Shown: positions 1 through 50,571 of the stretch, piece after piece
Position numbering within the stretch: the stretch's first letter is position 1
Layout of the letters: every line of letters starts with the position of its first letter
Assembly: GCA_963924565.1 (NCBI GenBank)
Contig: OZ004612.1
Span: forward strand, 806,001 to 870,000
Source: Ascidiella aspersa
Lineage: Eukaryota
Length of the DNA stretch: 64,000 nucleotides
Direction: 5' to 3'
The notes under the pieces: generated by a model
Seen by the model: the letters and a program-made list of their open reading frames with translations, nothing else
Told to the model about the DNA's origin: nothing
The model's database searches: none
Made by a program: the position numbers and the translations under genes

Positions 1-1190
1 CGAAATACGACGCTTTTGATGTTTACTGTGTTTTCAATATACATCAAAGTCAAGCATTCATCTATGTTGAATTTGTCAGTATCCTCCTTTAGTTGTTTTT
101 CTAAATTCTCATCGAAACGAGATTGTTGCAAGATGTCAATTGTTTTTATCTTCATTTGATCGTAGATTGCATCATCGCCACAAACAAAGCATATTTTAGT
201 TAAAATATCACCCAAGTGGTAACCGTTTTTAAGGTCAATATCCCGTCCAAGATATTCAAGCATTTCAGAAACAGGTTTGATCAGCTCAGTATCCCAGGGT
301 TTGTTCGGTGTAGCTGACCTACCAAGTGGGAACTTGCAAGCAAAAGTAACCATTCCATCAAACGAAATACCACGAGGTGTGTGCGCATCAAAGAACCAGC
401 CCTTACCAATATTTTCCTCAGGCTTATTAATGAATGGCAACGAAACGTGAGGTATTAGTGTTTCACCAAAGTTTACAACCACAACTTGAAACATCACAGA
501 CACCCAACGGAAATATTGAAGTACTTCCTCATAATCTGAACGATTTTGAACACCTTCTTCCAACAAATAGATGTGCTCGAAATCTGAATAAGGAGTGATT
601 TCATTTCTAGCAAGTGATCCCATTCCAACCAAAGCATATTTACAAGGAGCTGGACCTGTAGCTTCCACACAAAACTCCATTATATCTGCCATGAGCCATT
701 TGTATTTTTCTGTGATGATTTTTTGTAAACTCTCTATCAGAATAGTTCTACGTTGATCGGTTTCTGCAAGTGAAATTGCTTTTAGCGCAATATCCTTTAT
801 CCAACACCGAAAGTCCTTCACTTTAGTGACAGATGCTTCAACCAGTTGCTTCAAACTGTCCACACTGGTGTCATGTCTGCCAGCAAGTTGAAGAACACGC
901 GAACAAAGCTCAACGAGATCTTTCTCAACCTCAGCAACGTTGTCAGGTTTCCTCACAACAGCTGCGTTTAACAACACAGCGCTGCGAATAAGAGATATTT
1001 TCTTGTCTCTGCCCTCGGGTAATACATCAGCTATTTCGTGATATGCCCGGCCGAGTTGATGGATAACTTTGGCGGATTGTCTTACATCACGTTCCTTTCC
1101 GTTTGCGTAACATAATGACTTTAATTCCTCCGCAAGTTCAAAAGTTTTAGCTTTGTAAATACTGGCTTTAGTATCTGAGCACCCTTGCAT
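1..1190 (-). CDS. NTase(GlnD/DUF294-like)-TPR protein, copy 1, 5' part (runs off the left edge)
   Basis: ATG at 1190. Manual translation MQGCSDTKASIYKAKTFELAEELK...GMGSLARNEITPYSDFEH...VNIKSVVFR appears open to base 1 and is near-identical to the N-terminal half of the 17545..20574 ORF. It is missing from the ORF track because no stop lies in the window. Confidence 0.88.
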   Translation of the reverse strand, partial: MQGCSDTKASIYKAKTFELAEELKSLCYANGKERDVRQSAKVIHQLGRAYHEIADVLPEGRDKKISLIRSAVLLNAAVVRKPDNVAEVEKDLVELCSRVLQLAGRHDTSVDSLKQLVEASVTKVKDFRCWIKDIALKAISLAETDQRRTILIESLQKIITEKYKWLMADIMEFCVEATGPAPCKYALVGMGSLARNEITPYSDFEHIYLLEEGVQNRSDYEEVLQYFRWVSVMFQVVVVNFGETLIPHVSLPFINKPEENIGKGWFFDAHTPRGISFDGMVTFACKFPLGRSATPNKPWDTELIKPVSEMLEYLGRDIDLKNGYHLGDILTKICFVCGDDAIYDQMKIKTIDILQQSRFDENLEKQLKEDTDKFNIDECLTLMYIENTVNIKSVVF

Positions 1191-6141: not shown

Positions 6142-7958
6142 TGTTTTTTTTAGTTTTTTAAAGGTTTTGTTCGATTTTAAGACTTGTTTGTTGTGCTTAG
6201 CGCGATTATGAAATGTGTGTTCGCAATATTATTGAAGCTACAAATTATACGTAACCTGGTTCTATCAAAAAACGCCCAATTGGACCAATTCTCAATCTAG
6301 GTGTTTTCGGTTAGAAGATTTTTACCAGAAATGGTGTTACTTTTGATATGTTGCATTTTATTTTTCACGTTTGTTAACTAACGCCAGCATAAACGTAAAA
6401 TCGTTGCAATTTGAATATTCTACAATCATCGAATTTCTTCGTGTTTCGCCAGCTATCTTTGTCAATAAATTACGTTTTTTGAAACTTGCTTGCTTTTGAA
6501 GACTGACAATTCATCAAACATCACTTCGTTAAAAAGTTGCACTTACCGACAACAACTGCTGACCCGGACAAGATCCAATAAGATATTTATCGAACTAATA
6601 TCCTCTCTTAGTCACGACCAGACAATTGAAGTGCTGGGAGACTTTTGGTTCTTATTTGTTGTTTAGTTTACAAAACGCGCCAACTCCAGGAATAAAGTAT
6701 CCGTCGTTTATCAAAATTTACATCAGCCGTAAGAAAACATATAAGTTGCCCCTTTTCTTTGTCTGGTGATATCATTTAGACTTTAAGAATAGACATCTAT
6801 TTAAAATGCACCTCATTTTGTAAACTGTTATTTAGATATAACGAAATGATTAGGTGCAATTAAATTGAAATTCTTCGTAGACAATTTTGTTCTTGTGTTA
6901 GAAGGCTAATATTTCGCATCTAAATGAGTATAAAGGCTGTATCAAACCTATTTTGTGTTTCAGTGAAAACCTTTAGAACATCAAAGTTAAAAACAAAATT
7001 GTTTTAATTCGAAATGGTTTTACTTTTAAAAAAGGCTTTAAATTGAAACATTATGTAATTGAGGTTCCAAATAATTCAAATTATACGACAAAAACAATTG
7101 AGTTATTGGTTTTAAAATATATTCAGCTATTAAACTATGAAATTTATGCCTGAAGATTATTTATAACTTTCTTAACAGTTAAAAAATATTGTAAGTTATT
7201 TGTGGGGATTAACTCACGGCAAGAAATGGCGTGTAGTTGCAGCAATTGCAACAATCAACTTGATTAAAGGAATGGCATTTCAGAAAATTTACATTTTAGG
7301 AAAATATATTACGATTTTGTCATAATTATAGTTATTTTATCTTGCAAAATCAACAGAAATCCGTTTATGAAAGTTTTAATGGTCGTAAGATTATGACTTT
7401 GCCGGTTTTTGCAAACACTTTCAACGTATAAATAAACTGGTCTACTAGCGGTTACTAAACTTTTGTTAACAATGCAAAACAGATTTGGTTAGAATGTTGA
7501 GTTTTTTAAAATTGTTTTAGTAATGATTTAGCCTGGATTTTTTTGTGATGACCTTTCACTGGTATTTTATAATTTTTCCTCTAGGTGTTTAGAGCACTGC
7601 TTATTTACTTGCCAGGTCACTTGAGAAAACTTTAGTTTTATTGTTTTTATTTGATCATTGCCTCGATTGTAGTCGGCGTTACGTAACAATGATGAGCGCA
7701 GCGCTGTATTGTGACGCGTGTTGCTAAACAATTCCTTCAGTTATAGAATGTGACGTCATCGCTAAGCGCGATAAACTCTGGTTCGCTTGAAATCGCTTGA
7801 TATTTAACTTGTATGCGGGAATAGGCGACCACTGCTCTACAAACTCAACTAACAACAATATTAACAAAAATATGTTTTATTAAAAATGAAAGAAAGTTAA
7901 ATTTGTCGTGATTAAAAGCTCGGCAAGTTTTATATTGCCATAGCAACGGTTAATTGTC

Positions 7959-10937
7959 TCACTCGCCAAAGGGATGGTCGATTTTGCTCCACCACTTGAT
8001 TGCTGTGTTAAAACCCTTGACTGCTTTTTTAATTAGTTTCATCTGCCAATAACATTCACTGATTCCCAAGTGACAACCTGCAATATGCATCGCTGCTTCT
8101 TCATCGGGATCCGACGTCGAATGAGGTTCAATATCTTGTTCAAAGCATTTCACCGCATTTTCAAACTTGCCAAGTTGTCGATGCGAATGACCGACATAAC
8201 AAATCGGATATGTATATTCTTCTGGTGACACTATTTTTGTGTATACTTGCTGTTTTTCGAAATAAGCAACAACCTGTTCAGGTTTGTTTAATTCAAAGCT
8301 ACAAGTAATAAGTTCCCCATAACATTTTTCAATCATGGCATCTCTCTCTACAGTTTTATGAAAACCCAAATATATTTTTTGGGAAGTTTCCAATGAGTTA
8401 TAAGCTTCCTCGTATCGATCAAGTTGGTAAAGGAAAACTCCAGCGTTATATTGTGCTTTTGCAACTAACCGCATAAAGTCATATCCCTGATGTCTATCAC
8501 ATGTGGAGTTTGCTTCTTTAAACTGATCCAACGCTAATTTGTTATTATTGTTGTTACCATTATGTATTCCAATACAACTAAATATTTCAGCTCTGGCACG
8601 AACTTTGCTTCGCTGAAATTGTTTACTTGAGGGGAAGAGTTCATAAGCTTCCTTACACAATTCACTTGCTCGTAGAAAGTTTTTCTTTTTTTACGTGAAT
8701 TTTAGCCCGAAAACGTTTGCATTTAGCAAGGAGATGACATTTGTCAGTTGGAACGTAATGCTTACTCTTTGAAATCTTTTCCGCCATTTCAATTGCTTTT
8801 TCAGCTTCTGTGTAGTTTTCCATCTCGGTGTGAGTTTGAGCAAGTTCCAAAAACGCAATTGCTGTGTCGTGATCTGAAGTTTCATTAAAAGCTCTTTCAC
8901 GACATTGAAGTAGATATTTCTCGCCGTATTTAATGCTTTCTTTGTATTTACCAATACCAAGGAAATACCTAGCAATGTATAGTTGTGCACTGTTTGAAAC
9001 ATTGTCATTTAGAACAATGTTGATTATATCGCCAGCCTTCTTAAACATACGCGTATCAACATAGAACCCGAACAACTGGCATTGGACTTCTCGTATCTCC
9101 ATATCTGTGGCGCTAAAATGCAAAGCTTGTTCGTACCATTTAATCGCATCCAACTCCATTCCAAGTTCATTGTAACCACTTCCCATCATATACAAGGTGA
9201 AAGCCCGACTTGGATCGCGGTCCTCCATAAAATCTAAAGCATGTTGAAAGCACTCTAAAGCGCATTCGAGCTGATTAACTGCATAGTGACAAATACCTTC
9301 CAAAATTCGACTATGTTTTTTTGTTCCTTTTAACTCAAATACATTTCCGCTTCTGCATTTTTCAATGACCTTTATTGCATCGTTATACAAACGTAAAGAC
9401 ATAATCGACTTTATAACACGAAACCAAGTTGATTCTTTTGGTTCGGATTGCTTGATAGCGAAAATTTGCAAAGTAGAAGCTAAAGAGAAAAATTCAACAA
9501 TTCTTGATTTTCCGAATAATTCGAGCAACAAATCATGAAATGGTTCGAATCTTGCGTCAAGATAATTGCACTGGCCGGAGTATTTGAAGTAAACCCGCAA
9601 CCTAACTTCACAGGCGAAAGCAAGTGCGAACATAAAATCCTCCGATTGTTGCTGTGATATTTGGCTTGGAGTCAATTCCCGCAGAATATCGAAAGAAGAC
9701 GACGATTTGCAATTATATCGTCTACCAAGTGCTGCTATAAACAAAGTGACGCTTCGAAATACGACGCTTTTGATGTTTACTGAGTTTCCATTATGCATCA
9801 AATTTAAGCATTTATTGATGTTAAATTTGTCAGTATCCTCCTTAAGTTGGTTTTCTGGGTTCTCATCGAAACGAGGTTGTTGTAAATGTCAATTGTTTTT
9901 ATCTTTATTTGATCGTAGATTGCATCATCGCCACAAACAAAGCATATTTTAGTTAAAATATCACCCAAGTGGTAACCGTTTTTAAGGTCAATATCCCTTT
10001 CAAGATATTCAAGCATTTCAGAAACAGGTTTGATCAGCTCAGTATCCCAGGGTTTGTTCAGGGTAGCTGACCTACCAAGTGGGAACTTGCAAGCATGTGG
10101 CATCATTCCATCAAACGAAATGCCACGAGGTGTGTGCGCATCAAAGAACCAATCTTGGTCGTTGTTCCGGTCATTAATGAAAGGCAAAGCTACGCTTGGT
10201 ATTATGGTTTCACCAAAGTTTACCACCACAACTTGAAACATCACAGACACCCAACGGAAATATTCAAGTATTTCTTCATAATCTAAACGATTTTGAACAC
10301 CTTCTTCCAACAAATAGATGTGCTCGAAATCTGAATAAGGAGTGATTTCATTTCTAACAAGTGATCCCATTCCAACCAAAGCATATTTACAAGGAGCTGG
10401 ACCTGTAGCTTCCACACAAAACTCCATTATATCTGCCATGAGCCACTTGTATTTTTCTGTAATGATTTTTTGCAAACTCTCTATCAGACTAACTCTACGT
10501 TGATCGGTTTCTGCAAGTGAAATAGCTTTTAACGCAATATCCTTTATCCAACACCGAAAGTCTTTCACTTTAGTGACAGATACTTCAACCAGTTGCTTAA
10601 AACTGTCCACACTGGTGTCATGGCTGCCAGCAAGTTGAAGAACACGCGAACAGAGCTCATCGAGATCTTTCTCCACCTCAGCAACGTCGTCAGGTTTCCT
10701 CACAACAGCTGCTTTCAACAACACGGCGCTGCGAATGAGAGATATTTTCTTGTCTCTACCCTCGGGTAATTCGTCAGCTATTTCGTGATATGCCCGGCCG
10801 AGTTGATGGATAACTTTGGCGGATTGTTTTACATCACGTTCCTTTCCGTTGGCGTAACATAATGATTTTAATTCCTTTGCAAGTTCAAAAGTTTTAACTT
10901 TGTAAATACTAGCTTTATTAACTGAGCACTCTTGCAT
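7959..10937 (-). pseudogene. NTase-TPR copy 2, frameshifted
   Basis: Three ORF pieces (9804..11009, 8662..9801, 7959..8660) are collinear with copy 3. There is a 1-nt loss near 9885, an extra T in the run at 8686-8692 and an extra G at 7971-7973. The motif reads GSLVRNEITPYSDFE. ATG at 10937. Confidence 0.8.
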
Positions 10938-15415: not shown

Positions 15416-17544
15416 AAAAAAAAATTGATTTATCGTTTATTTGTCATTTTGTACTCGTTTGGGTTTATAAGTGTTAATAGGAGGGATAAGTATTCGATTT
15501 ATAGGACTTATTACAGGAATTAGTTAGTTGAATGTTATTTTAAGCCTTATTCTAAAGGGTTTAGGCTTTTTTCCGCTAACGTATTATTTCGACTCATATT
15601 TGTTAGTCTAATTTTGGTTCAAAATTTTGTTTTATTTTAACGTTTATGTTTTTCCAATTTCTATTTTTTTTACTGGAATCAAGTGAAACGTAAACCACCT
15701 AAACACAATGCAAGGGATTTTGAGTCAATTTAAGTACAATATTCAAGCTTTTTTATTTTGTTTGACATAAAAGCTGTGTAATTGCACTAATTTTGGTAAA
15801 TCGACCTTTGTGTTTCTGAATTGGTTATCACGTTTAATTTAATTAAGGAATTAATGCTATTAAATTATTTTAAATGGATTTTCAATTGATTAATTGTAAT
15901 ATATGTGGCTAAATGCAAAGTCTTCACTCATTTCCCTGAGGTAAATGCTTTTTATAGCACGTGTTCTAGTTTTATAAACATCATAGTGGTAGGGTGTACG
16001 CAAAGACGACATTTCTCCATAAATACTTAAATCTAACCCAAATAAATTATATTAACTTCACGATTGTATTATTTTCACCAATAAACACAAACAGCGCCTT
16101 TACAAAAGTGATTGCCCAACCAGCAATTTGCATCCACACATAAAAGCACCCAGACATAATACAAACAAGCACATAAATACACCTTCATACTCGATACACG
16201 CACTCGTATAATGCCGGCAAAGTAGGTTAAAGGTCACCGCTGTAAATATGCTGACTCACGATGCAGTTCGGTAAGTTCCGTAGTTTGAAGTATTTTTTGT
16301 GAATTTTTAAAGTTTGTTTTCAGTTAAGCTGGTAAATTAACTTATCAGGAGTAATTTAATTTTTTGCAAAACCATTCAAAATCATTCCCAAATATTTTTG
16401 CACCGACTTACAACGTCAAAAATAAAAAAATATTGAATATTTTCCCTGACATATGTTCGTCCATCCTGTGAAAGTTGATTCCGATCTCACTCGCTCTACA
16501 GATTCGAGACTCAAGTAAACAAAGGGAAGGGCGTAACAATGCCGAGCGCTGCGCTGTATTGTGACGCGCGTTGCCAAACAATGGCTTCAATTGTACAATG
16601 TGACGTCATCGATGTTGCGCCTGAAACTCTGGTTCGCATGAAAATCGCTCGATATTTAACTTGTATGCGGGAATAGGCGACTGCTGCTCTACCAACTGAA
16701 CTATCAACAAACTAACGTTTATTAGGATTTGTGTAAAATTTACTTCGTAAGCGACGGTTATAAAATCTCAAAAGATTTCAATACAAATTAAAGAATATTC
16801 AGTTTGTGTCAATTTTAATTAAAAACAATTAGTAAACAACACTTAAATATACACTTTATAATCGTTATGCTCGGCTTCTTCAAATACAATATTTTGCAAC
16901 TGCAAATAACTTATCAACAAGGCACATTAAAGAACCTGAATACGATTTAAAGTTAGGCTTTACGAACTTTCATATTTTGTTACAACGATAAAATTATAAA
17001 AATTTCAATAAAATTATTTATGTCCATAGGCCACGACAAGTCATTTGGACGACATTTAAAGTTTCAAATTAGAGGAAATAACTAGGAAGAAGTTTATTTT
17101 TTAGATTCTTGCAAGTTTTATTATTTTGTCGCACTATTTGATTTTCTCACTCGCCGAAGGATTGTCGATTTTGCATGAAGCCTACATTTTCTTTACTTCA
17201 TATTAAATGTCTTCGAATTAAATATTTGGCGCCTGATAATAGGGGCAGCTAACATTTACGCATAAAATTTGATTTTGTGCCTCGTAAGCGAGAATTATAA
17301 TGTCAATACACTAAAAATGTTTTCAAAGGCTATTTCAAGTCATTTTAGCCTATTTATCCAAAAGGATTACAAACAATAATTAAAAGTTTATTTGGGGGGG
17401 AAAAACCACGTTTTACAAGTTTTATTATTTTGTAGCATTCTTTAATTTTCTCACTCGCCGAAGGATCGTCGATTTTTCTCCACAACTTGATTGCTGTTTT
17501 CGAACTCTTAATTGCCTTTTCATGTAGCTTTTTTTATTTTTTTT

Positions 17545-20500
17545 TTATGAAAAAATCTCGGCAAGTTTTATAATGCCGTAGCACAGGTTAATTTTTTCAT
17601 TCGCCAAAGGATGGTCGATTTTTCTGAACATCTTGATTGCTGTTTTCGAACTCTGCATTGCTTTGTCATATAGCTTCATCTGCAAATAACATTCACCACT
17701 TTGCTTGTGACAATCTGCAAGAAACATCGCTACCCTTTTATCGGAATTCGACGGCGAATGAAGTTCAATTTCTTGTTTAAAGTATTTCACCGCATTTTCA
17801 AACTTGCCAAGTTTTTGATACGAACGACCGACCAAACAAAACAAATATTTTTGTTCTTCTAATGGAACTAGTTTTATATACTCCTGTCCTTTGTCGAAAT
17901 AATCAACAACCTGTTCAGGTTTGTTTAATTCAAAAGTACAATTAATGAGTTCCCTATAACATTTTCCAATCATGACATCCCCCTCTACAGTTTTATGAAA
18001 TCGTAAGAACATTCCTAAAGAAGTTTCCAGTGTGTTATAAGCTTCCTCGTATCGATCAAGTTTGTAGAGACAAAATCCAGCATTTAATTGCGCGTTTGCA
18101 ACAAACAGCATAAAGCCATGTTCCTGATGTCCATCACATATAGAGATTGCTTCTTTAAACTGATCTAACGCTAATTTGTAATTATTGTTGTTACCATTAT
18201 GTTTTCCAATATACATATACATTTCAGCTCTGACACGAACTTTGCTTCGATGAAAATGTTTACTTGAGGGGAAGAGCTCATAAGCTTCCTTATACAATTC
18301 ACTTGCTCGTAGAAAGTTTCTCTTTTTTACGTGAAGTTTAGCCAAGAGCCATTTGCATTGAGCAGGAAGATGATATTTGTTGTTTGGAACGTAATGCTTA
18401 CTCTTAGAAATACTTTCCGCCATTTCAATTGCTTTTTCAGCTTCTGTGTAGTTTTCCATCTCGATGTACGTTTCACCAAGTTCTAGCAAGGCAAATGCTG
18501 TGTCGTGATCTGAAGTTTCATCGAAGGCCTTTTCACGACATTGATGTAGATATTTCTCGCCGTATTCAATGCTTTCTTTGTATTTGCCAATTCCACGGTA
18601 ATATTGAGAAACATATAGTTGTGCACTTTTCGAAACATTGTCGTTTAACACAAGCCTAACCATTCTACCAGCCTTTTCAAGCAGACCTTCATAAACATAC
18701 AACCCCAACAATCCACATTGGACTTTTTGTGTGAACATATCTGTGCTGCTTGAATGCAAAGCTTTTTCGTAGCATTTAATCGCATCCAAGTTCATTCCAA
18801 GTTCATTGCAACAACCTCCCATTATATTCAACATTATAGCTCGCGTTGGATAGTGGTCTTCCATAAACTTTAACGCATGTTGAAAGCATTTTAAAGCTAT
18901 TTCATGCTGATTAAGTCTATAGTGACACAAGCCTTCTGCAAAGCAACTTAGTGCTTTTGTTTCTTCAAACAAAACTATATTTTTGCATCTTACTTTTTTC
19001 ATGACCTTTATTGCTTCGTTATATAAACGTAAAGACATAAGCGAAAATATAACAAGAGGCCAGGTTAATTCCATCAATTCAGATTGCTTGTTGGTGAACA
19101 TTTGCAAAGTGGAAGCTAAAGAAAAAAATTCAACAATTCTTGATTTTCCAAATACTTCAAGCAACAAATCATGGAAAGGTTCGAATCTTGCGTCAAGATA
19201 ATCGCACTGGCCGGAGTATTTGAAGTAAACCCGCAACCTAACTTCACAGGCGAAAGCAAGTGCGAACATAAAATCATCTGATTGTTGCTGTGATATTTGG
19301 CTTGGAGTCAATTCCCGCAGAATATCGAAAGAAGACGACGATTTGCAATTATATCGTCTACCAAGTGCTGCTATAAACAAAGTGACGCTTCGAAATACGA
19401 CGCTTTTGATGTTTACTGAATTTTCATTATGCATCAAAGCCAAGCATTTACCGATGTTGAATTTTTCAGTATCTTCTTTAAGTTGGTTTTCTAAATTCTT
19501 ATCGAAACGTGGTTGTTGTAAAATGTCAATTGTTTTCGTTTTCATTTGATCGTAGATTGCATCATCGCCACAAACAAAGCATATTTTAGTTAAAATATCG
19601 CCCAAGTGGTAACCGTTTATAAGGTCAATATCCCGTCCAAGATATTCAAGCATTTCAGAAACAGGTTTGATCAGCTCAGTATCCCAGGGTTTGTTCGGTG
19701 TAGCTGACCTACCAAGTGGGAACTTGCAAGCATGTGGCATCATTCCATCAAACGAAATGCCACGAGGTGTGTGCGCATCAAAGAACCAATCTTGGTCGTT
19801 TTCCTGATCATTAATGAAAGGCAAAGCTACGCTTGGTATTATGGTTTCACCAAAGTTTACAACCACAACTTGAAATAACACAGACACCCAACGGAAATAT
19901 TCCAGTATATCATCATAATCTGAACGATTTTGAACACCTTCTTCCAATAAATAGATGTGCTCGAAATCTGAATAAGGAGTGATTTCATTTCTAGCAAGTG
20001 ATCCCATTCCAACCAAAGCATATTTACAAGGAGCTGGACCTGTAGATTCCACACAAAACTCCATTATATCTGCCATGAGCCATTTGTATTTTTCTGTGGT
20101 GAGTTTTTGCAAACTCTCTATCAGACTAGCTCTACGTTGATCAGTTTCTGCAAGTGAAATTGCTTTTAACGCAATATCGTTTATCCAACACCGAAAGTCT
20201 TTCACTTTAGTGACAGATGCTTCAACTAGTTGCTTCAAACTGTCCACACTGGTGTCATGGCTGCCAGCAAGTTGAAGAACACGCGAACAAAGCTCATCGA
20301 GATCTTTCTCCACCTCAGCAACGTTGTCAGGTTTCCTCACAAGAGCTGCATTTAACAACACGGCGCTGCGAATGAGAGATATTTTCTTGTCTCTACCCTC
20401 GGGTAATTCGTCAGCTATTTCGTGATATGCCCGGCCGAGTTGGTGGATAACTTCGGCGGATTGTTTTACATCACTTTCCTTTCCGTTTGCGTAACAGTAT

Positions 20501-20574
20501 GACTTTAATTCCTTTGCAAGTTCAAAAGATTTAGCTTTGTAAATACTAGCTTTATTAACTGAGCATCCTTGCAT
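17545..20574 (-). CDS. Intact NTase(GlnD/GlnE/DUF294-like)-TPR protein, copy 3, 1009 aa from ATG
   Basis: Uninterrupted ORF. The track's TTG start at 20646 lies at a putative 5'-UTR intron, so the first ATG at 20574 is used. GS..R.E....SD.E motif at about 19960-20010. The NIK...R / SSFDIL..L / EVRLRVY helical domain resembles GlnD/GlnE NTase C-domains. The C-terminal half has repeated TPR-like units (A...G......A...F..AL). Confidence 0.92.
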   Translation of the reverse strand: MQGCSVNKASIYKAKSFELAKELKSYCYANGKESDVKQSAEVIHQLGRAYHEIADELPEGRDKKISLIRSAVLLNAALVRKPDNVAEVEKDLDELCSRVLQLAGSHDTSVDSLKQLVEASVTKVKDFRCWINDIALKAISLAETDQRRASLIESLQKLTTEKYKWLMADIMEFCVESTGPAPCKYALVGMGSLARNEITPYSDFEHIYLLEEGVQNRSDYDDILEYFRWVSVLFQVVVVNFGETIIPSVALPFINDQENDQDWFFDAHTPRGISFDGMMPHACKFPLGRSATPNKPWDTELIKPVSEMLEYLGRDIDLINGYHLGDILTKICFVCGDDAIYDQMKTKTIDILQQPRFDKNLENQLKEDTEKFNIGKCLALMHNENSVNIKSVVFRSVTLFIAALGRRYNCKSSSSFDILRELTPSQISQQQSDDFMFALAFACEVRLRVYFKYSGQCDYLDARFEPFHDLLLEVFGKSRIVEFFSLASTLQMFTNKQSELMELTWPLVIFSLMSLRLYNEAIKVMKKVRCKNIVLFEETKALSCFAEGLCHYRLNQHEIALKCFQHALKFMEDHYPTRAIMLNIMGGCCNELGMNLDAIKCYEKALHSSSTDMFTQKVQCGLLGLYVYEGLLEKAGRMVRLVLNDNVSKSAQLYVSQYYRGIGKYKESIEYGEKYLHQCREKAFDETSDHDTAFALLELGETYIEMENYTEAEKAIEMAESISKSKHYVPNNKYHLPAQCKWLLAKLHVKKRNFLRASELYKEAYELFPSSKHFHRSKVRVRAEMYMYIGKHNGNNNNYKLALDQFKEAISICDGHQEHGFMLFVANAQLNAGFCLYKLDRYEEAYNTLETSLGMFLRFHKTVEGDVMIGKCYRELINCTFELNKPEQVVDYFDKGQEYIKLVPLEEQKYLFCLVGRSYQKLGKFENAVKYFKQEIELHSPSNSDKRVAMFLADCHKQSGECYLQMKLYDKAMQSSKTAIKMFRKIDHPLANEKINLCYGIIKLAEIFS

Positions 20575-22794
20575 ATTACAACTGTTGTAAATTTCTAAAA
20601 AGGCAAGTAAAGTTGTAAAATGTAGGTTAATCTTGTTATTTACCAATTAAATGCATTCCAGATCTACAAAAACGACTTCTAATCTACAAGCAACCAAGCA
20701 CTAATGACTGTAATTCAGTCTACATTCGAACAACTTAATATTAAGCCTAAGCCAATTCAAGTGGGCTGGTTGTGACGCGACAATAACCGGATGTGACGCG
20801 ACAATAACCGGGCGTGACGCAGTGAATAAATATCAGCCTAGCCATTGTTTGTCGAAGCGAGCAACGAGAAAACATAATCCCAGTGATGTTAGATTTTTGG
20901 TTGGATTCAATTTCCCAAAAATCCAAACACATCTCCAAGATTAAAACATTTCTTAAAATGTTTGCATTGATCAAAGTTCTTTATTTCTATGATTTAGTAT
21001 TTGCATGCACCACTTCGGTCGCTGGTCGTTTACATTTAGCAGAGAAAGACAGAGCAACGTCACTCACAATTCGCGCACACTGCTTCTTTCTTAAGTAGGA
21101 AGTGGCTCGATAAGCTACAATTGAAAAAAAGCATGTCGGGGTTTGGAGATTCTAACCAAAACTTGAAACAAATCTATTTGTCGGCGTCTGATGTGAGGTT
21201 TCGGTAATAACACGATATTATCAGACATTGTTGGTTCTAACTAATAAAACCGAATACATGTTCAGCCTTTTAAGTTTTATCTCACCCTTGAAAAAAGCAA
21301 ACGAGTGTTTTTCTTATCTGTCTAAAGCGGACCAAGCTTGTTTTGATTATTAATTACCCTGATGATGCGGTCAGCTGGTATCTGCGACCAAAACGTCGGT
21401 TTATAACTTCGTTTACACAAGAAGAGCATTTTCTATATTTATATGCATTAGGTTAATTTGACAAAATCTTTCGTCTTTTTAAGAAATATGTTTTTTTTAA
21501 AGTGCAGAAATATACGCTTAGTATTTATGTAGGGGCACCCAAGCTGGGTTAATAAAACGTCGATAACAAAAATCGTGTTAAAGAAGACACATTAGCGTTA
21601 CCCGTATTGCCTGTTTGTCTACTGTTACGACTTTACTAGTAATTCTAGAAAACTACCTAGGCCTCCTGTAAAGTCGCTGTGAGTTCTTATTTTCGGGCAT
21701 TAAATAACCTACCAAAGAGAACTTATATTAAAGACCACAACAAGAAAACCCAATGTACAGATGTATTGGTTGCAAGAGTAGAATATTGCCACACCACAAC
21801 AATAATGACACTTAGACACACACAATTACTTCCAAAAAAAACCGACAGACAGAGCATAATGAAACTTAAAGTTTTACTCGCTAATTTCACAAGGCTACAC
21901 CCAGACGTCTCTCCCCGCTGTAGGCGGTGAGCCTCTCGTAATATACGCTAAAACAAAACTCCTTCTCACGGGAACCGACGCGCTCCCGGAAACCCCAGGC
22001 CCGCCTTACAGGGCGGCCGTTTCGTGGAAAGATAACATTGGGCGGACCTTTTAGTGAGAAGTTAAACCGCGCCGGAAAACAAGCGATAAATGATCGTGAG
22101 ATTTGCAGAAATGTTTGGAGATAGGAAAAAACATGTCTAGAGTCCAATTAACGGCGAACACCACAGCGCACAAGAATATTACGTTAATATACAATTATAG
22201 ATGTCTCGAAATGCGAAAACCTAATTCCTAGCCCTACATTTAAGAACAAAGGCGCAAAATTAATAATGAATGTTAGAATTTACAGTCGGCGTAATTAGCA
22301 ACCGGTGATAATTTTGTAGTGCTAATTAAGCACGTAACAGCTACTAAAGTTTATAATTTGATATAATAGTTGTATTTAATTTTTGTATTATCTTAGATTT
22401 CTGTAAAAATAACTGGCTTAGATTTTTAATCCCTTAGTGTCAGTCATCTTTTTGATAACTTTTTCTTTAATGAATTATTTCTCTAATCCCGTATTTATTT
22501 TATTTTTTTTAATCTCCAATTTAAAATTATAAATCTCCCCTTACGCACCAAACGGTTTCGTTGTTTAGCGAAGTTTTTTGTCCTGAATTTGTTATTTGCT
22601 CTTACGTGAAATAAGTTTTTGTTCCAAAGTAAACTCCTTTTTCAACTAAAGTCACCTGACATTTTATTAGATTAACGAAGAAAATAAAGGCATTTATTTT
22701 ACTAAGTTTATCAACGAATATACAAAATGGTTGATTTTGATTTTTTTAACTTCCAAATAAAGATTTCGAAACTGGGTTTACACACGACACAAAA

Positions 22795-34516: not shown

Positions 34517-37501
34517 TCACTCGCCAAAGGGATGGTCGAATTCTCTCCAAAACTTGATTGCTGTGTTAAAACTCTCGACTGCTCTTTTAATTAGTTTCAT
34601 CTGCCAATAACATTCACTGATTCCCAAGTGACAACCTGCAATATGCATCGCTGCTTCTTGATCAGGAACCGACGTCAAATGAAGTTCGATTTCTTGTTCA
34701 AAACATTTCACCGCATTTTCAAACTTGCCAAGTTGTTGATACGAACAACCGGCATAACAAATCGGATATGTATATTCTTCTGGTGACAATATTGTGTATA
34801 CTTGCTGTTTTTCGAAATTATTAACAACCTGCTCAGGTTTGTTTAATTCAAAGCTACAACTAATGAGTTTCTTATAACAACTTCTAATCATGTAATCTAT
34901 CTTTACCGTTTTATGAAATCCCAAAAACATTCCCAAAGCAGTCTCCAGTGTGTTAAAAGCTTCCTCGTACCGTTTTCGTTGGTAGAGACAAACTCCAGAG
35001 CTTAATTGCACATTTGAAACTAACCACATAAAGTTATGTCCCTGATGTCCATCACATGTGGAGATTGCTTTTTCAAACTGATTTAACGCTAATTTGTAAT
35101 TATTATTGTTGTAGTTATGTATTCCAATACAGAAATACATTTCAGCCCTGACAAGAACTTTACGTCGCTGAAATTGTTTACTTGAAGGAAAGAGCTCATA
35201 AGCTTTCTTATACAATTTACTTGCTCGTAGAAAGTTTTTCTTTTTTACTTGAACTTTAGCCCGGAACGCTTTGACTTCAGCAGGAAGATTATCTTTGTCG
35301 TCTGGAACGTAATGTTTGTTTTTAGAAATATTTTCAGCCATTTCAATTGCCTTTTCAGCTTCTGTGTAGTTTTCCATTGTGATGTAAGTTTGAGCAAGTT
35401 CTAGCAATGCACCTGCTGTGTCGTTATCTGAAGTTTGATCGAAGGCGTTTTCACGACATTGAAGTAGATATTTCTTTCCGTATTCAATGCTTTCTTGGTA
35501 TTCACCAATTCCATGGTAATACCGAGCAATACAGAGTTGTGCATCTTCCGAAACATTGTCTTTTAAAAGAAAGTTGAGCATGTTACCGGCCTTTTTAAAC
35601 AAATGCTCTTTCACATATAATGTCAACAATTCACATTGGACCAATTGTGTAACCATAATTGTGCTGCTTGAATGCAAGGCTTGTTCGTGGCATTTAATCG
35701 CGTCAAAGTTCATTTCAAGTTCATAGTAACATCTTCCCATCACATGCAAGGTTGAAGCCCGATTTGGATCGTGGTCCTCCATAAAATTTAAAGCATGTTG
35801 AAAGAACTTTAAAGCGGTTTTACGCTGATGAACTCTATGGTGACAATAGCCTTCCCAAATGCAACTCATTTTTTTTGTTCCTCTTATCTCAAAAATATTT
35901 TTGCTTTTGCATTTTTCAATGACCTTTATTGCTTCGTTATACAAACGTAAAGATATAATCGACTTTACAACACGAAACCAAGTTGATTCTTTTGATTCAG
36001 ATTGCTTGATGGTGAACATTTGCAAAAAGGAAGCAAGTAAGAAAAATTCAACAATTCTGGATTTTCCAAATTTTTCAAGCAACAAATCATGAAAAGGTTC
36101 GAATCTTGCGTCAAGATAATCGCACTGGCCGGAGTATTTGAAGTAAACCCGCAACCTAACTTCACAGGCGAAAGCAAGTGCGAACATAAAATCATCTGAT
36201 TGTTGCTGTGATATTTGGCTTGGAGTCAATTCCCGCAGAATATCGAAAGAAGACGACGATTTACAATTATATCGTCTACCAAGTGCTGCTATAAACAAAG
36301 TAACGCTTCGAAATACGACGCTTTTGATGTTTACTGAGTTTACATCATGAATTAAACCCAAGCATTTATCGATGTTGAATTTATCAGTATCTTCTCTAAG
36401 TTGGTTTTCTAGATTCTTATCGAAACAAGTTTGTTGTAAGATGTCAATTGTTTCCATTTTCATTTGATCGTAGATTGCATCATCGCCACAAACAAAGCAT
36501 ATTTTAGTTAAAATATCGCCCAAGTGGTAACCGTTTTTAAGGTCAACATCCCTTCCAAGATATTCAAGCATTTCAGAAACAGGTTTGATCAGCTCAGTAT
36601 CCCAGGGTTTGTTCGGTGTAGCCGACCTACCAAGTGGGAACTTGCAAGCAAAAGTAACCATTCCATCAAACGAAATGCCACGAGGTGTGTGTGCGCATCA
36701 AAGAACCAGCCCTTGCCATTATTTTCCTCGGGATCATTAATGAAAGGCAACGAAACGTGAGGTATTAGGGTTTCACCAAAGTTTATAACCACAACTTGAA
36801 ACATCACAGACACCCAACGGAAATATTCAAGTATTTCTTTATAATCTGAACGATTTTGAACACCTTCTTCCAACAAATAGATGTGCTCGAAATCTGAATA
36901 AGGAGTGATTTCATTTCTAGCAAGTGATCCCATTCCAACCAAAGCATATTTGCAAGGAGCTGGACCTCTAGCTTCCACACAAAACTCCATTATATCTGCC
37001 ATACGCCACTTGTATTTTTCCGTGATGATATTTTGCAAACTCTCTATCAGACTAGCTCTACGTTGATCGGTTTGTGCAAGTGAAATTGCTTTTAACGCAA
37101 TATCCTTTATCCAACACCGAAAAGTCTTTCACTTTAGTGACAGATGCTTCAACCAGTTGCTTCAAACTGTCCACACTGGTGTCATGGCTGCCAGCAAGTA
37201 GAAGAACACGAGAACAAAGCTCATCGAGATCTTTCTCAACCTCAGCAACGTTGTCAGGTTTCCTCACAACAGCTGCATTTAACAACACGGCGCTGCGAAT
37301 GAGAGATATTTTCTTGTCTCTACCCTCGGGTAATTCATCAGCTATTTCGTGATATGCCAGGCCGAGTTGATGGATAACTTTGGCGGATTGTTTTACTTTA
37401 CGTTCCTTTCCGTTTGCGTAACATAATAACTTTAATTCCTTTGCAAGTTCGAAAGTTTTATCTTTGTAAATACCAGCTTTATTATCTGAGCACTCTTGCA
37501 T
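34517..37501 (-). pseudogene. NTase-TPR copy 4, frameshifted
   Basis: ORF pieces 37058..37501, 36589..37038 and 34517..36661. Extra A at 37120-37123, extra GT in the (GT)n at about 36685-36692, and the same C-terminal extra G as copy 2 at 34529-34531. Confidence 0.8.
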
Positions 37502-47283: not shown

Positions 47284-50200
47284 TTATTTTTTCGATTTCA
47301 AACCACGTCTTGCAAGTTTTTTTGTTTTGTAGCAATGATTAATTCTCTCACTCGCCAAAGGATGGTCGATTTTTTTCCACAACTTGATTGCTGTTTTCGA
47401 ACTCTGCATTGCTTTGTCATGTTGCTCCATCTGCAAATAACATTCACCGATTAGCTTGTGACAATCTGCGATAACCATCGCTGCATCTTTATCGGGATCC
47501 GACGTCAAATGAAGTTTGATATCTTGTTCAAAGCATTTTACCGCATTTTCAAACTTGCCAAGTTGTTGATATGAACGACCGACATAATATAATAAATATT
47601 TTCGTTGTTGTAATGAAAGCTGTTTCATATATTCTTGCCCTTTTTTGAAGTAATTAACAGTCTGTTCATGTTTTTCAATTTAAAGCCACAAATAATGAGT
47701 AACACAGAACAGTTTCCAATCATGTGATCCATCTCTACAGTTTTATGAAAACCCAAATACATTTTCAGAGAAGTTTCCAGTGTGTTATAAGCTTCCTCGT
47801 ATCGATCAAGTAGGATAAGACAAATTCCAGCGTTTAATTTCGCGTTTGCAACTAACTGCACAAAGTTATGTCCTTGATGTTCATCACACGTGGAGATTGC
47901 TTTTTGAAACTGATATAACGCAAATTTGTAATCATTGTTGCTACAATAATGTATTCCCTTACACCTATACTTGTCAGCTCTGACAAGAACCTTGCTTCGC
48001 TGAAAATATTTACTTGAGGGGTAGAGCTCATAAGCTTCCTTAAACAAATCACTTGCTCGTAAAAAGTTATTTGTTTTTACGTGAATTTGAGCCCGGAGCC
48101 GTTTGCATTCAGCAGGGAGATGATATTTCTTGTTTGGAACATAATGTTTACTTTTCGAAATATGTTCCGCCACATCGATTGCGTTTTCAGCTTCTGTGTA
48201 GTTTTCCATAGCGATGTAAGGTAGAGCACGTTCTACCAACGCAACTGCTGTGTCGTGATCTGAAGTTTCATCGAAGGCGTTTTTACGACATTGATGTAGA
48301 TGTTTCTCGCCGTATTTAATGCTTTCTTGGTATTTTCCAAATGCACGGTAATACCGAGCAATACAGAGTTGTGCATATTTGTAAACATTGTCGTCTAGAA
48401 CAAGGTTAAGTATCTTGCTGGCCTTCTCAAACATATTCTCTCTAACATACAACCCGAACAACTCGCATTGGTATGGTCGTGAATTTTTGTTTGTGCTGTT
48501 TGACTGAAAAGCTTTTTCGAAACATTTAATCGCAAGCAAGATAAATCCAAGTTCGTTGCAACAAATTCCAATCTCATACAAAATTACACTACGCCTTTGA
48601 AAATCTAACGCAAAGAACTTTAAAGCAAGTTCATGTTGATCAAGTCTAGAGTGACACAAACCCTCCAAATAGGAAATGTCTGCTTTTGAAGCTTTTAACT
48701 CAAATGTATTTCTGCTTTTGCATGTTTTAATGACCTCGATTGCTTCGTTATACAAACGTAAACACATAAGAGAAAGTATAACACGAAGCCAAGGTGATTG
48801 TTTTGATTCAGATTGCTTGTTGGTGAACATTTGCAAAATGGAAGCTAAAGAGAAAAATTCAACAATTCTTGATTTACCAAATACTTCCAGCAACAAATTA
48901 TGAAATGGTTCAAATCTTGCGTCAAGATAATCGCACTGGCCGGAGTATTTGAAATAAACCCGCAACCTAACTTCACAGGCGAAAGCAAGTGCGAACATAA
49001 AATCATCCGATTGTTGCTGTGGTATTTGGCTTGGAGTCAATTCCCGCAGAATATCGAAAGAAGACGACGATTTGCAATTATATCGTCTACCAAGTGCTGC
49101 TATAAACAAAGTGACGCTTCGAAATACGACGCTTTTGATGTTTACTGAGTCTTTCTCATGCATCAAAGCCAAGCATTTATCGATGTTGAATTTGTCAGTA
49201 TCTTCCTTAAGTTGTTTTTTCAAATTCTCATCGAAAAGAGGTTGTTGTAAGATGTCAATTGTTTTCATCTTCATTTGATCGTAGATTGCATCATCGCCAC
49301 AAACAAAGCATGTTTTAGTTAAAATATCGCCCAAGTGGTAACCGTTTTTAAGGTCAATATCCCTTTCAAGATATTCAAGCATTTCAGAAACAGGTTTGAT
49401 CAGCTCAGTATCCCAGGGTTTGTTCGGTGTAGCTGACCTACCAAGTGGAAACTTGCAAGCAAAAGTAACCATTCTATCAAACGAAATGCCACGAGGTGTG
49501 TGCGCATCAAAGAACCAGCCCTTACCATTATTTTTGTCTGGATCATTAATGAAAGGCAACGAAACGTGAGGTATTAAGGTTTCACCAAAGTTTACAACCA
49601 CAACTTGAAACATCACAGACACCCAACGGAAATATTCAAGTATATCATCATAATCTGAACGATTTTGAACACCTTCTTCCAACAAATAGATGTGCTCAAA
49701 ATCTGAATAAGGAGTGATTTCATTTCTAGCAAGTGATCCCATTCCAACCAAAGCATATTTACAAGGAGCTGAACCTGTAGCTTCCACACAAAACTCCATT
49801 ATATCTGCCATGAGCCACTTGTATTTTTCCGTGATGATTTTTTGCAAACTCTCTATCAGACTAGCTCTACGTTGATCGGTTTGTGCAAGTGAAATTGCTT
49901 TTAACGCAATATCGTTTATCCAACACCGAAAGTCTTTCACTTTAGTGACAGATGCTTCAACCAGTTGCTTCAAACTGTCCACACTGGTGTCATGGCTGCC
50001 AGCAAGTTGAAGAACATGCCAACAAAGCTCATCGAGATCTTTCTCAACCTCAGCAACGTTGTCAGGTTTCCTCACAATAGCTGCATTTAACAACACGGCG
50101 CTGCGAATGAGAGATATTTTCTTGTCGCGTCCTGTTGATAATCGGGCAATTATTTGATATGCAAGGCCTAGTCTGTGCATGACTTTAGCAGATGTCTTGG

Positions 50201-50300
50201 GGTCTCTTTCTTTTCCGTTTGCAAAGCATTGTGACTTTAACTCTTTTGCTAACGGTTCAGTAAAGCTTATCAAATATTCAACAGACACAGTGTTTCCCAT
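47284..50300 (-). pseudogene. NTase-TPR copy 5 with a divergent N-terminus (MGNTVS); single late frameshift, so possibly a functional 891-aa truncated form
   Basis: An 891-aa ORF at 47625..50300 plus a C-terminal piece at 47284..47628. There is a 1-nt loss in the T-run near 47671-47675 relative to copy 3. Acceptor ctttttcacag lies 20 nt upstream of the ATG. Confidence 0.8.
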
Positions 50301-50571
50301 TTTAGGTTTAAACTGACTAGCTGTGAAAAAGAAAGTTTAACTTTCTTAAATGTTGTGAATTTAAACAAATAAAAATTTTTAATAGTAGAATATTCTAGCA
50401 AAGCTAGCCAGTCAATATTAAGATATATACATTGATTTCTCCGGCAAACCGTCGTCAGTATTTCCTAATTAATGTAAATTTCTATTAAATAAAACGTAGA
50501 ACAAATAATAATTAATATAATGTTTCTAATTAATCTTCATTCACTTTGAACATGGTGGAGAAGGCACTGAT

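What the first reader, a model, noticed from the sequence alone, without database searches (positions are those of the whole stretch)
17545..20574. Possible horizontal origin from bacteria, then domestication (intronless 3-kb CDS with a short 5'-UTR intron)
Seen: the 3-kb CDS has no introns, whereas the neighbouring LCCL gene has 11 introns in 1.44 kb of CDS. A short GT..AG segment sits just before the ATG: GTAAATAAC...TTTTTAG, about 49 nt at 20595-20643, with a counterpart of about 56 nt in copy 1 (near 1212-1267). From memory and unverified, DUF294-NTase plus TPR fusions occur in intracellular bacteria such as environmental chlamydiae and Legionellales/Amoebophilus-like symbionts. Inference: an HGT-derived or retroposed founder acquired eukaryotic UTR splicing. 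The spliced genes and TEs on the same contig argue against contamination.
Basis: partly seen in the sequence, partly recalled or inferred. Interest (0 to 1): 0.75.

Follow-up and report, generated by a model that had tools for sequence, protein, structure and literature searches.

The report
Sea-squirt AMPylase-TPR gene with bacterial kin
This intact, intron-free sea-squirt gene belongs to a large family of enzyme-plus-repeat proteins whose only relatives outside a few marine animals are in bacteria that live inside other cells, so an old gene transfer between bacteria and animals is likely, though its direction is not settled.

Summary
Window 17545-20574 (-) is one uninterrupted 1009-codon CDS, and the GT..AG segment lies at 20643-20595.

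The N-half is a GlnE/DrrA-type adenylyltransferase (VIA Z 25.5 to DrrA) and the C-half is a TPR array. The genome holds at least 90 matches, nearly all in single open frames, about 60 of them in one cluster.

Relatives fall into four groups:
- a tunicate clade (named members Ciona and Clavelina);
- hundreds of Branchiostoma proteins;
- octocorals;
- proteins of the same architecture in obligate intracellular bacteria (Holosporaceae; Parachlamydiaceae/Neochlamydia, the published NEX2 family).

Tunicate, amphioxus and one octocoral sequence form one clade (98 SH-aLRT). Any transfer therefore predates the tunicate radiation and is not an event at this locus.

The direction is unresolved. The outgroup root falls in an open polytomy, and AU tests reject neither a single animal clade (p 0.25) nor a single bacterial-plus-octocoral clade (p 0.10).

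The proposed UTR intron is not supported as a family feature. The acceptor AG is kept in 19 of 25 copies and the donor GT in 8 of 25, and no RNA read covers it.

This scan found the family before on other DNA of this genome.

The parts
17545..20574 (-). Intact single-exon CDS of 1009 codons plus stop (stop codon 17545-17547), copy 3 of the window's array
20155..20574 (-). Residues 1-140: N-terminal helical, TPR-like segment in front of the enzyme core
   Evidence: AF2 model helices 5-140. Residues ~8-110 align to the TPR repeats of LGN at Z 10.5, which is in the range the tool warns is common for helical repeats.
19075..20154 (-). Residues 141-500: GlnE/DrrA-type adenylyltransferase core with its helical subdomain. 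The motif is G191-S192 ... D203-x-E205, with invariant D276.
   Evidence: Pfam DUF294. Invariant columns of A2. Foldseek E 5e-7 to 6e-6 to GlnE and DrrA. VIA Z 25.5, 24.1 and 23.3.
17548..19047 (-). Residues ~510-1009: TPR array
   Evidence: Pfam TPR_12, TPR_2, TPR_1 and TPR_8
20595..20643 (-). The pyrimidine-AG end (20595-20603) is the conserved part.
   Evidence: Sequence. AG kept in 19 of 25 copies, GT in 8 of 25. No RNA read lies here.
20575..20594 (-). 20-nt leader between the AG and the ATG
20700..20910 (-). Upstream block conserved between the window's copies. It includes three GTCGCGTCAC-type motifs at about 20763-20820. Promoter-like or outron; function not tested.
   Evidence: Alignment A1, sequence
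3..1190 (-). Copy 1 (runs off the window), 88% protein identity over residues 1-394
7916..10937 (-). Copy 2, broken into several frames, with a duplicated 5' module
34523..37501 (-). Copy 4, in three frames
47311..50687 (-). Copy 5. Its family-type start lies upstream of the long ORF, and its acceptor AG is changed to AA.
17411..17527 (-). Remnant of a second C-terminal TPR piece (residues 968-1006, 64% identity) just after the stop codon
24090..27405 (+). Neighbouring multi-exon LCCL/EGF gene. Exons seen at 24090-24233, 24860-25036, 26532-26750 and 27160-27405.
   Evidence: Exons were read one by one and not joined.

Best explanation
The CDS is one intact member of a single-exon gene family with at least 90 copies. 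Each member joins a GlnE/DrrA-type adenylyltransferase (a probable protein AMPylase) to a TPR array. In this tunicate the family grew by tandem DNA duplication of units that carry their own upstream region.

The family is older than this locus. It is shared with other tunicates, and it forms one clade with the very large Branchiostoma family and one octocoral protein. Outside animals, the only proteins with the same architecture are expanded, effector-like families of obligate intracellular bacteria: Holosporaceae-type alphaproteobacteria, and Parachlamydiaceae/Neochlamydia NEX2, which often carry an added F-box.

An ancient transfer between bacteria and animals therefore links the two. I take bacterium-to-animal, before the tunicate radiation and probably before the tunicate-amphioxus split, as the more likely direction. 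The catalytic fold is otherwise bacterial, and every tunicate copy lacks introns.

Inferred mode of action, not shown: the TPR array binds a target or ligand, and the enzyme core transfers AMP (or another NMP) to a protein.

The 49-nt GT..AG is probably not a conserved cis-intron. The conserved element is the pyrimidine-AG about 20 nt before the ATG. That fits a spliced-leader trans-splice acceptor or the end of a longer 5' intron.
For: Intact ORF and domains.

Catalytic motif: G-x11-D-x-E and D276 are invariant in 13 of 13 paralogues that are 39-68% identical to the target. The motif is also present in the Holosporaceae protein.

Fold: the AF2 model has pLDDT 82 and pTM 0.84. VIA gives Z 25.5 to DrrA 6yx5_B (313 residues aligned, rmsd 3.5), 24.1 to GlnE 1v4a and 23.3 to GlnE 3k7d. 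The next row is the shorter DrrA N-terminal domain 3nku_B at Z 12.9, and the next unrelated fold scores 10.5.

Family size and lack of introns: there are 90 matches in G000. Of the 49 rows at 82% identity or more, 35 lie in open frames of at least 983 codons. Divergent copies (40-68% identity) on C2, C3, C6, C7 and C9 are also uninterrupted over the N-domain.

DNA-level duplication: five tandem copies lie 9.6-17 kb apart, with about 300 nt of conserved upstream sequence.

Bacterial relatives:
- Holosporaceae bacterium 'Namur' has 15 matched places in open frames of 345-2271 codons. The best one aligns colinearly with the target over 775 columns, running into the TPR array. Its TPR hits reach E 1.6e-73, and two paralogues carry an F-box.
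- 13 of 401 genomes of that bacterium's order have matches.
- In a sample of 401 genomes of its phylum, 7 matched. Six of these are weak 25-31-bit hits to ordinary DUF294/GlnD proteins.
- Parachlamydiaceae and Neochlamydia proteins appear among the hits.
- A 231-kb Neochlamydia plasmid has 11 matching places.
- The NEX2 family is described in PMC4209131.

Tree: all 10 tunicate rows form one clade (100). Tunicates, amphioxus and P0356 form 19 rows at 98. Bacteria, unnamed rows and 3 octocoral rows form 30 rows at 99 in the unrooted 72-row tree.

5' region: AG kept in 19 of 25 copies, GT in 8 of 25.

Sense-strand RNA: 36 reads, almost all with the first mate on +.
Against: Direction is not shown.
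- The outgroup branch is long (2.2 on each side), and the ingroup base is an open five-way polytomy.
- Holding all bacterial and unnamed rows plus 5 octocoral rows as one clade costs only 0.52 lnL (p-AU 0.10).
- Holding all 24 animal rows as one clade costs 4.87 lnL (p-AU 0.25).
- So reciprocal monophyly, and hence either direction, stays open.

The bacterial holders are themselves patchy. All are intracellular, and some fuse the module to eukaryote-type F-box domains. That is the usual signature of genes taken from eukaryotes.

The trees are 'quick' searches. The careful search never finished.

Animal distribution rests on named rows in best-120 lists. Most tunicate-clade rows are unnamed.

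At sequence level DrrA scores only E 0.2, and Pfam SidM_N scores 15.4 bits, below its cut-off of 27.

Expression of this very copy is not shown. 34 of the 36 reads are only 95-99% alike, and 20 fit only in part, so most probably come from paralogues.

Enzyme activity and trans-splicing are both untested.
Confidence: 0.55

Rival explanations
1. Transfer went the other way. The module arose in an early animal lineage. Intracellular bacteria captured it as a eukaryote-like effector gene and then spread and expanded it among symbionts.
For: - Bacterial holders are few, and all are intracellular: 13 of 401 genomes in one order, and no specific hit in the other 400 genomes of the phylum sample.
- Some fuse the module to F-box domains (PMC4209131).
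- A Neochlamydia plasmid carries 11 places, which shows mobility among symbionts.
- The Holosporaceae N-domain scores higher against Branchiostoma (459 bits) than against chlamydial proteins (166-170 bits).
- The tree does not reject a single bacterial-plus-octocoral clade.
Against: - The four solved structures that stand clear of the rest are all bacterial proteins: DrrA twice and GlnE twice.
- The weaker sequence relatives are bacterial DUF294/GlnD proteins.
- No protist holder was named in any list, although I recall the known hosts of these bacteria to be amoebae and ciliates rather than marine animals.
- In the rooted quick tree, bacterial lineages make up three of the five basal branches.
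Confidence: 0.27
2. There was no transfer at the base of the tunicate family. An intron-bearing ancestral animal gene was retroposed in a tunicate ancestor, and the intronless copy then multiplied.
For: - All tunicate copies examined lack introns, including those only 40% identical.
- Some Branchiostoma members are listed with isoforms X1/X2, which hints at introns there.
- Tunicates group with amphioxus.
Against: - This explains the lack of introns but not the bacterial relatives with the same architecture.
- The present copies spread by DNA-level duplication together with their upstream sequence.
Confidence: 0.1
3. The 49-nt GT..AG (20643-20595) is a real cis-spliced 5'-UTR intron of this subfamily.
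For: - It has a GTAAAT donor, a pyrimidine tract and an AG in the right order.
- The same arrangement is present in 8 of the 25 copies compared, including window copies 1, 3 and 5.
Against: - The donor is absent at the aligned place in 17 of 25 copies, many of them intact, while the AG is kept in 19 of 25.
- Copy 5 keeps the GT but has lost the AG.
- No read and no joint was seen at these places in any of the 4 runs.
Confidence: 0.2
4. The bacterial-looking gene is contamination or an assembly artefact.
For: None found.
Against: - The contig is 33 Mb.
- There are at least 90 copies on six contigs.
- GC is 0.34-0.39 in the 2-kb bins over the gene, within the window's usual range.
- A spliced LCCL/EGF gene lies between copies.
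- DNA runs of the species cover the gene and its flanks.
Confidence: 0.01

Closest known systems
NEX2 family of Neochlamydia (Domman et al. 2014, PMC4209131)
   Same: A DUF294-type nucleotidyltransferase followed by a C-terminal TPR array, massively expanded within one genome. A Neochlamydia member (P0378) is a detectable homologue and sits in the same tree.
   Different: NEX2 is bacterial and usually starts with an F-box, sometimes with an OTU domain as well. The tunicate protein has no F-box hit, starts with a helical TPR-like segment, and is encoded in an animal chromosome.
DrrA/SidM AMPylation domain of Legionella pneumophila (PDB 6yx5, 3nku)
   Same: Best structural match of the N-domain model: Z 25.5, 313 of 339 residues aligned. 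It has a G-x11-D-x-[DE] motif; I give DrrA's own motif from recall.
   Different: Only 12% identity. The sequence search gives E 0.2, and Pfam SidM_N is below its cut-off. DrrA carries GEF and PI4P-binding domains instead of TPR repeats (recalled). No activity is shown here.
Glutamine synthetase adenylyltransferase GlnE (PDB 1v4a, 3k7d)
   Same: Same two-subdomain adenylyltransferase fold, Z 24.1 and 23.3.
   Different: GlnE is a housekeeping bacterial regulator with two tandem NTase domains and no TPR repeats (recalled).
Animal AMPylases FICD/HYPE and SelO (recalled, not tested here)
   Same: Protein AMPylation in animals.
   Different: They have unrelated folds, Fic and pseudokinase (recalled). 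They are single-copy, conserved genes rather than expanded families.
Expanded TPR/LRR sensor families of marine invertebrates (for example those surveyed in PMC8195603)
   Same: Lineage-specific expansion, tandem arrays, and a repeat arm joined to an effector-type enzyme.
   Different: The passages I read do not mention this nucleotidyltransferase-TPR family. The comparison is by analogy only.

Membership tests
GlnE/DrrA-type adenylyltransferase (Pol-beta NTase superfamily) | G-x(11)-D-x-[DE] metal-binding motif on the NTase core | tested here: met
   G191, S192, D203 and E205 are invariant in 13 of 13 aligned paralogues, and the same motif occurs in the Holosporaceae homologue. The motif definition is recalled.
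GlnE/DrrA-type adenylyltransferase (Pol-beta NTase superfamily) | Fold match over the NTase core and helical subdomain to solved members | tested here: met
   VIA Z 25.5 (6yx5_B), 24.1 (1v4a) and 23.3 (3k7d_B), against 10.5 or less for unrelated folds. Foldseek E 5e-7 to 6e-6.
GlnE/DrrA-type adenylyltransferase (Pol-beta NTase superfamily) | Sequence-profile membership (Pfam) | tested here: inconclusive
   DUF294 PF03445 scores 30.7 bits, above its cut-off of 21. SidM_N PF20879 scores 15.4 bits, below its cut-off of 27. The PDB sequence search gives DrrA E 0.2.
GlnE/DrrA-type adenylyltransferase (Pol-beta NTase superfamily) | Transfer of AMP to a protein substrate | not testable with these tools
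   Needs an enzyme assay.
NEX2-like F-box/DUF294/TPR effector family | DUF294 domain followed by C-terminal TPR repeats | tested here: met
NEX2-like F-box/DUF294/TPR effector family | N-terminal F-box | tested here: not met
   No F-box family among the 25 best of the 28 Pfam families that matched the target at E up to 1. An F-box is present in 2 of the 3 Holosporaceae paralogues scanned.
Animal gene of bacterial origin (HGT) | Physically part of the animal genome | tested here: met
   33-Mb contig, at least 90 copies, spliced neighbouring gene, host-like GC
Animal gene of bacterial origin (HGT) | Bacterial homologues with the same architecture, and patchy distribution among animals | tested here: met
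   Named animals are only Ciona, Clavelina, Branchiostoma, Dendronephthya, Xenia and Paramuricea. This is limited to best-120 lists.
Animal gene of bacterial origin (HGT) | Animal sequences nested within bacterial diversity on a rooted tree | tested here: inconclusive
   The rooted quick tree has an open basal polytomy. AU p is 0.10 for a single bacterial-plus-octocoral clade and 0.25 for a single animal clade.
Spliceosomal 5'-UTR intron | GT donor and AG acceptor conserved among paralogues | tested here: not met
   GT in 8 of 25 copies, AG in 19 of 25
Spliceosomal 5'-UTR intron | RNA reads spanning the junction | tested here: inconclusive
   The RNA run has zero depth in bin 20528-20674, and only about 6% of the run was read.

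The most novel reading that the evidence does not exclude
A bacterial effector-type AMPylase-TPR gene from an intracellular symbiont was captured by an early chordate or an even earlier marine animal. It kept its single-exon form for hundreds of millions of years. It radiated into about a hundred (tunicates) to many hundreds (amphioxus) of immune-like sensor-enzymes. A second lineage entered octocorals separately. This would give animals a third, horizontally acquired class of protein AMPylase.
Probability: 0.4. Interest if true: 0.8.

Novelty: new variant of a known kind. Interest (0 to 1): 0.58.

Why it matters
If the bacterial-to-animal reading holds, this is a rare case of an inter-domain transfer that seeded one of the largest gene families of invertebrate chordates, rather than a single metabolic gene. 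The enzyme type involved (DrrA/GlnE-like AMPylase) is, as far as I recall, known in animals only as a bacterial weapon used against them.

It also ties the puzzling NEX2-type expansions of amoeba symbionts to animal families. That gives both sides a testable biochemical hypothesis: TPR-guided AMPylation.

If the direction is the reverse, it documents symbionts copying an animal sensor-enzyme.

In either case the link between these bacterial and animal families does not appear in the papers I could search.

Tried and rejected
- Contamination: rejected.
- Recent, locus-specific transfer: rejected, because the tunicate clade is monophyletic and groups with amphioxus.
- Careful IQ-TREE search: started three times and never finished. 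All tree statements rest on 'quick' C20 trees and one FastTree.
- Rooting with canonical DUF294/GlnD: gave an unresolved base.
- AU tests: rejected nothing.
- PDB sequence search: gave only E 0.2 for DrrA.
- RNA test of the intron: failed for lack of coverage. The joints listed there (for example 20525 to 20684, AA..AT, one contig with side 26) are not GT..AG and do not match the proposed intron.
- Third protein search, with octocoral P0356: meant to reveal other animal phyla, but it listed only P0356 itself (Dendronephthya), two unnamed proteins and Branchiostoma.
- Chlamydiota survey by the genome search: not possible, because I had no handle for that phylum.
- Spliced-leader RNA search: not done, because I would have had to type the leader sequence from memory.
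- Supplementary files: supplementary figures S2-S6 of PMC4209131 (NEX2 trees) were not seen and may bear on the bacterial phylogeny.

Rows dropped before the trees:
- 9 of 413 HMM-positive sequences, for poor coverage.
- 8 duplicate rows of the same Holosporaceae genes, and the 5 outgroup rows, from the 398-row tree.
- The 72-row and 51-row sets are hand- or distance-picked subsets of the 398.

The 25 copies compared for GT/AG are the 5 window copies plus 20 of the most similar paralogues whose match starts at residue 1. They are not a random sample.
Full report
**Observation.** Window 17545-20646 (-) is one open frame. From the first ATG at 20574 it encodes 1009 residues without interruption. 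On the minus strand the sequence just before the ATG reads ...TTAATTG|GTAAATAAC...CCTTTTTAG|AAATTTACAACAGTTGTAAT-ATG. So the 49-nt GT..AG segment (20643-20595) and the 20-nt leader are as described. Copy 1 has a 56-nt counterpart at 1267-1212. The window's GC is 0.30-0.44, and the 2-kb bins over the gene (0.34-0.39) do not stand out. The neighbour on the + strand is a split LCCL/EGF gene. An LCCL model matches only its positions 17-59, in a 61-codon frame at 24899-25021, and further LCCL-like and EGF-like exons lie at 24090-24233, 26532-26750 and 27160-27405. I did not count its introns or join its exons.

**What the protein is.** Pfam gives DUF294 (30.7 bits, cut-off 21, residues 146-218) and many TPR families over residues ~540-990. 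SidM_N reaches only 15.4 bits, below its cut-off. I aligned the N-half with 12 paralogues that are 39-68% identical to it (A2). G191-S192...D203-x-E205 and D276 are invariant in that alignment. An AlphaFold2 model of residues 1-500 has pLDDT 82 and pTM 0.84.
- Foldseek's only matches below E 0.001 are E. coli GlnE (3k7d, 1v4a) and Legionella DrrA (6yx5_B).
- VIA-align gives Z 25.5 to DrrA (313 aligned, rmsd 3.5), 24.1 and 23.3 to the two GlnE domains, and 12.9 to the shorter DrrA fragment 3nku. Everything else scores 10.5 or less.
- Sequence alone does not reach DrrA (E 0.2).

So the N-half is a GlnE/DrrA-type adenylyltransferase behind a short helical, TPR-like lead-in, and the C-half is a TPR array. 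Activity is inferred, not shown.

**The family in this genome.** The window carries five tandem copies on the minus strand. Only copy 3, the finding, is whole. Copies 2 and 4 are split over frames, copy 1 runs off the edge, and copy 5 has a displaced start. The genome (308.6 Mb, 75 contigs; the window is C6:806001-870000) gives 90 matches to the N-domain, which is a lower bound. About 60 of them lie in C6:0.7-2.7 Mb. Of the 49 rows at 82% identity or more, 35 lie in open frames of at least 983 codons. Copies only 40-68% identical, on C2, C3, C6, C7 and C9, are also uninterrupted across the N-domain. The lack of introns is therefore a family trait of long standing. The window's copies share about 300 nt of upstream sequence, so the recent spread was by DNA duplication and not by retroposition.

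**Relatives elsewhere.**
- The whole protein finds 900 proteins with the same domain pair (E up to 1e-5), at no more than 44% identity. The two named ones are from Ciona intestinalis and Clavelina lepadiformis.
- An exhaustive HMMER search with the N-domain finds 1547 clusters at E up to 0.001 and 427 at E up to 1e-30. Only 150 are listed.
- The ESM Atlas points to Chordata-dominated clusters and to a Chlamydiota cluster with DUF294 + TPR (a lead only).
- A scan of 185,579 bacterial and archaeal species with patterns from A2 gave 61 pattern matches and confirmed one locus, in Holosporaceae bacterium 'Namur' (27% identity over residues 26-489).
- That 1.9-Mb genome has 15 matched places in frames of 345-2271 codons.
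- The best of these proteins (1428 aa) aligns colinearly with the target over 775 columns, into the TPR array. It is TPR-rich, and two paralogues carry an F-box.
- Searching with its N-domain lists, after its own paralogues, about a hundred Branchiostoma proteins (31-42% identity). Then come the octocorals Dendronephthya and Xenia, unnamed short-contig proteins, two Parachlamydiaceae proteins and one from Neochlamydia.
- One unnamed cluster contains Paramuricea clavata proteins.
- A search from octocoral P0356 gave 809 hits. Its best 120 are P0356 itself, two unnamed proteins and Branchiostoma. No further phylum was named.

**Bacterial spread.** 13 of 401 sampled genomes of the Holosporaceae genome's order match (1.1-2.4 Mb genomes, several with many copies). 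In 401 genomes sampled across its phylum, only that genome matches specifically. Six others give 25-31-bit hits to 620-880-residue DUF294/GlnD-type proteins, five of which I used as outgroups. A 231-kb plasmid of Neochlamydia sp. S13 holds 11 matching places. Domman et al. 2014 (PMC4209131, passages read) describe NEX2, a family of 50 Neochlamydia proteins with an F-box, a mid-protein DUF294 and C-terminal TPRs, and they regard these proteins as acting in the host cell. I saw nothing from Legionellales or Amoebophilus.

**Trees.**
- FastTree, 398 N-domains. One tunicate clade holds 269 rows: the 13 from this genome, Ciona, Clavelina and 254 unnamed rows (support 100). Amphioxus rows and a mixed bacterial/octocoral part lie on the other side.
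- Quick IQ-TREE (LG+C20), 72 rows. Tunicates form 29 rows at 100. Eleven amphioxus rows plus octocoral P0356 group at 88. Thirty bacterial, unnamed and octocoral rows form one side of a branch at 99.
- Rooted set, 51 rows with five DUF294/GlnD outgroups. Tunicates, amphioxus and P0356 form a 19-row clade at 98. The base of the ingroup is an open five-way polytomy: three bacterial lineages, the chordate clade, and a bacterial-plus-octocoral clade at 84.
- AU tests. Holding all 24 animal rows together costs 4.87 lnL (p 0.25). Holding the 27 bacterial, unnamed and octocoral rows together costs 0.52 lnL (p 0.10). Neither is rejected.
- The careful search did not finish.

**Reading.**
- Shown: the gene is an integral, old part of the tunicate genome. 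Its family is shared with amphioxus. The same architecture occurs in a few lineages of intracellular bacteria. Named animal holders are few.
- Inferred: one (possibly two, counting octocorals) ancient inter-domain transfer.
- Favouring bacterium-to-animal: the fold's clear relatives are all bacterial, bacterial lineages occupy most basal branches, and the tunicate genes have no introns.
- Favouring the reverse: the bacterial holders are patchy and intracellular, they fuse the module to F-box domains, and the Holosporaceae protein scores higher against amphioxus than against chlamydiae.
- My estimates are roughly 0.55-0.6 for bacterium-to-animal, 0.25-0.3 for animal-to-bacterium, and about 0.1 for no transfer at the base of the tunicate family.

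**The 5' segment.** I compared 25 copies: the 5 in the window plus 20 close paralogues fetched. The AG at the aligned place is kept in 19, and the GT in 8 (one more has an offset GT). Large groups of intact copies have no GT there. In the five-copy alignment, copies 2 and 4 read CT at the donor place, and copy 5 keeps the GT but reads AA at the acceptor. A conserved pyrimidine-AG about 20 nt before the ATG, without a conserved donor, fits a spliced-leader acceptor. Trans-splicing is well documented in Ciona (PMC1488885, search listing and abstract only). It also fits the 3' end of a longer intron. It does not support a family-wide 49-nt cis-intron.

**RNA.** One RNA-seq run of the species was laid, with about 6% of it read. 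Thirty-six reads were laid, almost all with the first mate on +, as expected for a minus-strand RNA in common stranded libraries. They lie only between 18764 and 20527, plus a trace at 20822-20968. None lies on the C-terminal two thirds of the TPR array (17545-18763) or on 20528-20674. Of the 36, 34 are 95-99% alike and 20 fit only in part, so they mostly report paralogues. The family is expressed in sense. This copy and its 5' splice pattern remain untested.

**Literature and earlier notes.**
- DUF294 with amphioxus: 0 papers.
- nucleotidyltransferase + TPR + amphioxus + expansion: one paper (PMC8195603), whose passages do not mention this family.
- The DrrA/AMPylation/chordate search gave nothing relevant among the 10 titles and abstracts listed out of 1,272 papers.
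- I found the bacterial NEX2 family in print, but not the animal family or its link to NEX2, within the searched library.
- Two earlier follow-ups of this scan described the same family on other DNA of this genome. My results agree with them on family size and DrrA-likeness, and I checked both points here.

**Limits.** The trees are quick searches on picked subsets. Most rows are unnamed. 

Noticed in passing
window 25063-25490 (+): A near-perfect 11-nt microsatellite, TGGCCTTTGGC x 38.9 (99% matches). It lies between exons of the LCCL/EGF gene, is open in all three + frames, and causes the local GC peak of 0.435.
   Followed up: partly
window about 10937-11060 (-), copy 2: Copy 2 carries two start modules in tandem. 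A first ATG plus a few codons is followed by an inserted copy-3-like block (upstream piece, GT..AG segment, leader and a second ATG). This looks like unequal exchange or gene conversion between neighbouring copies.
   Followed up: no
window about 20763-20820 (-): Three closely spaced GTCGCGTCAC-type motifs sit in the conserved block about 190-250 nt upstream of the ATG. One to three copies are present in the other window copies. This is a candidate shared promoter element.
   Followed up: no
window 17411-17527 (-): A 39-residue remnant matching the last TPR residues (968-1006, 64% identity) lies directly after the stop codon. It is a trace of a rearranged or duplicated 3' end.
   Followed up: no
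G000:C6:1833967-1834098 (+): A second LCCL exon match lies among family copies in the 1.8-Mb part of the cluster, so the duplicated unit seems to include the LCCL gene as well.
   Followed up: no
L019 and L020 (G001:C79): Two Holosporaceae paralogues carry an N-terminal F-box in front of the NTase-TPR module (E 1.7e-5 and 0.0099), as in Neochlamydia NEX2. The same fusion thus occurs in two bacterial phyla.
   Followed up: partly
NZ_AP017978.1 (Neochlamydia sp. S13 plasmid, 231 kb): Eleven places on one large plasmid match the bacterial N-domain. The best is 31.6% identical over 94% of the query.
   Followed up: no
window 19184-20577, run X4 (organism B): Contigs from a run labelled as a different organism cover the N-domain with about 3-4% differences and then diverge upstream of the ATG. 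A related species or strain therefore holds a very similar N-domain.
   Followed up: no
P0364, P0371, P0372, P0365 (octocorals): A second octocoral lineage of the family (Xenia, Dendronephthya, Paramuricea) sits inside the bacterial part of the tree, away from octocoral P0356. The AU test does not reject a single animal clade.
   Followed up: partly
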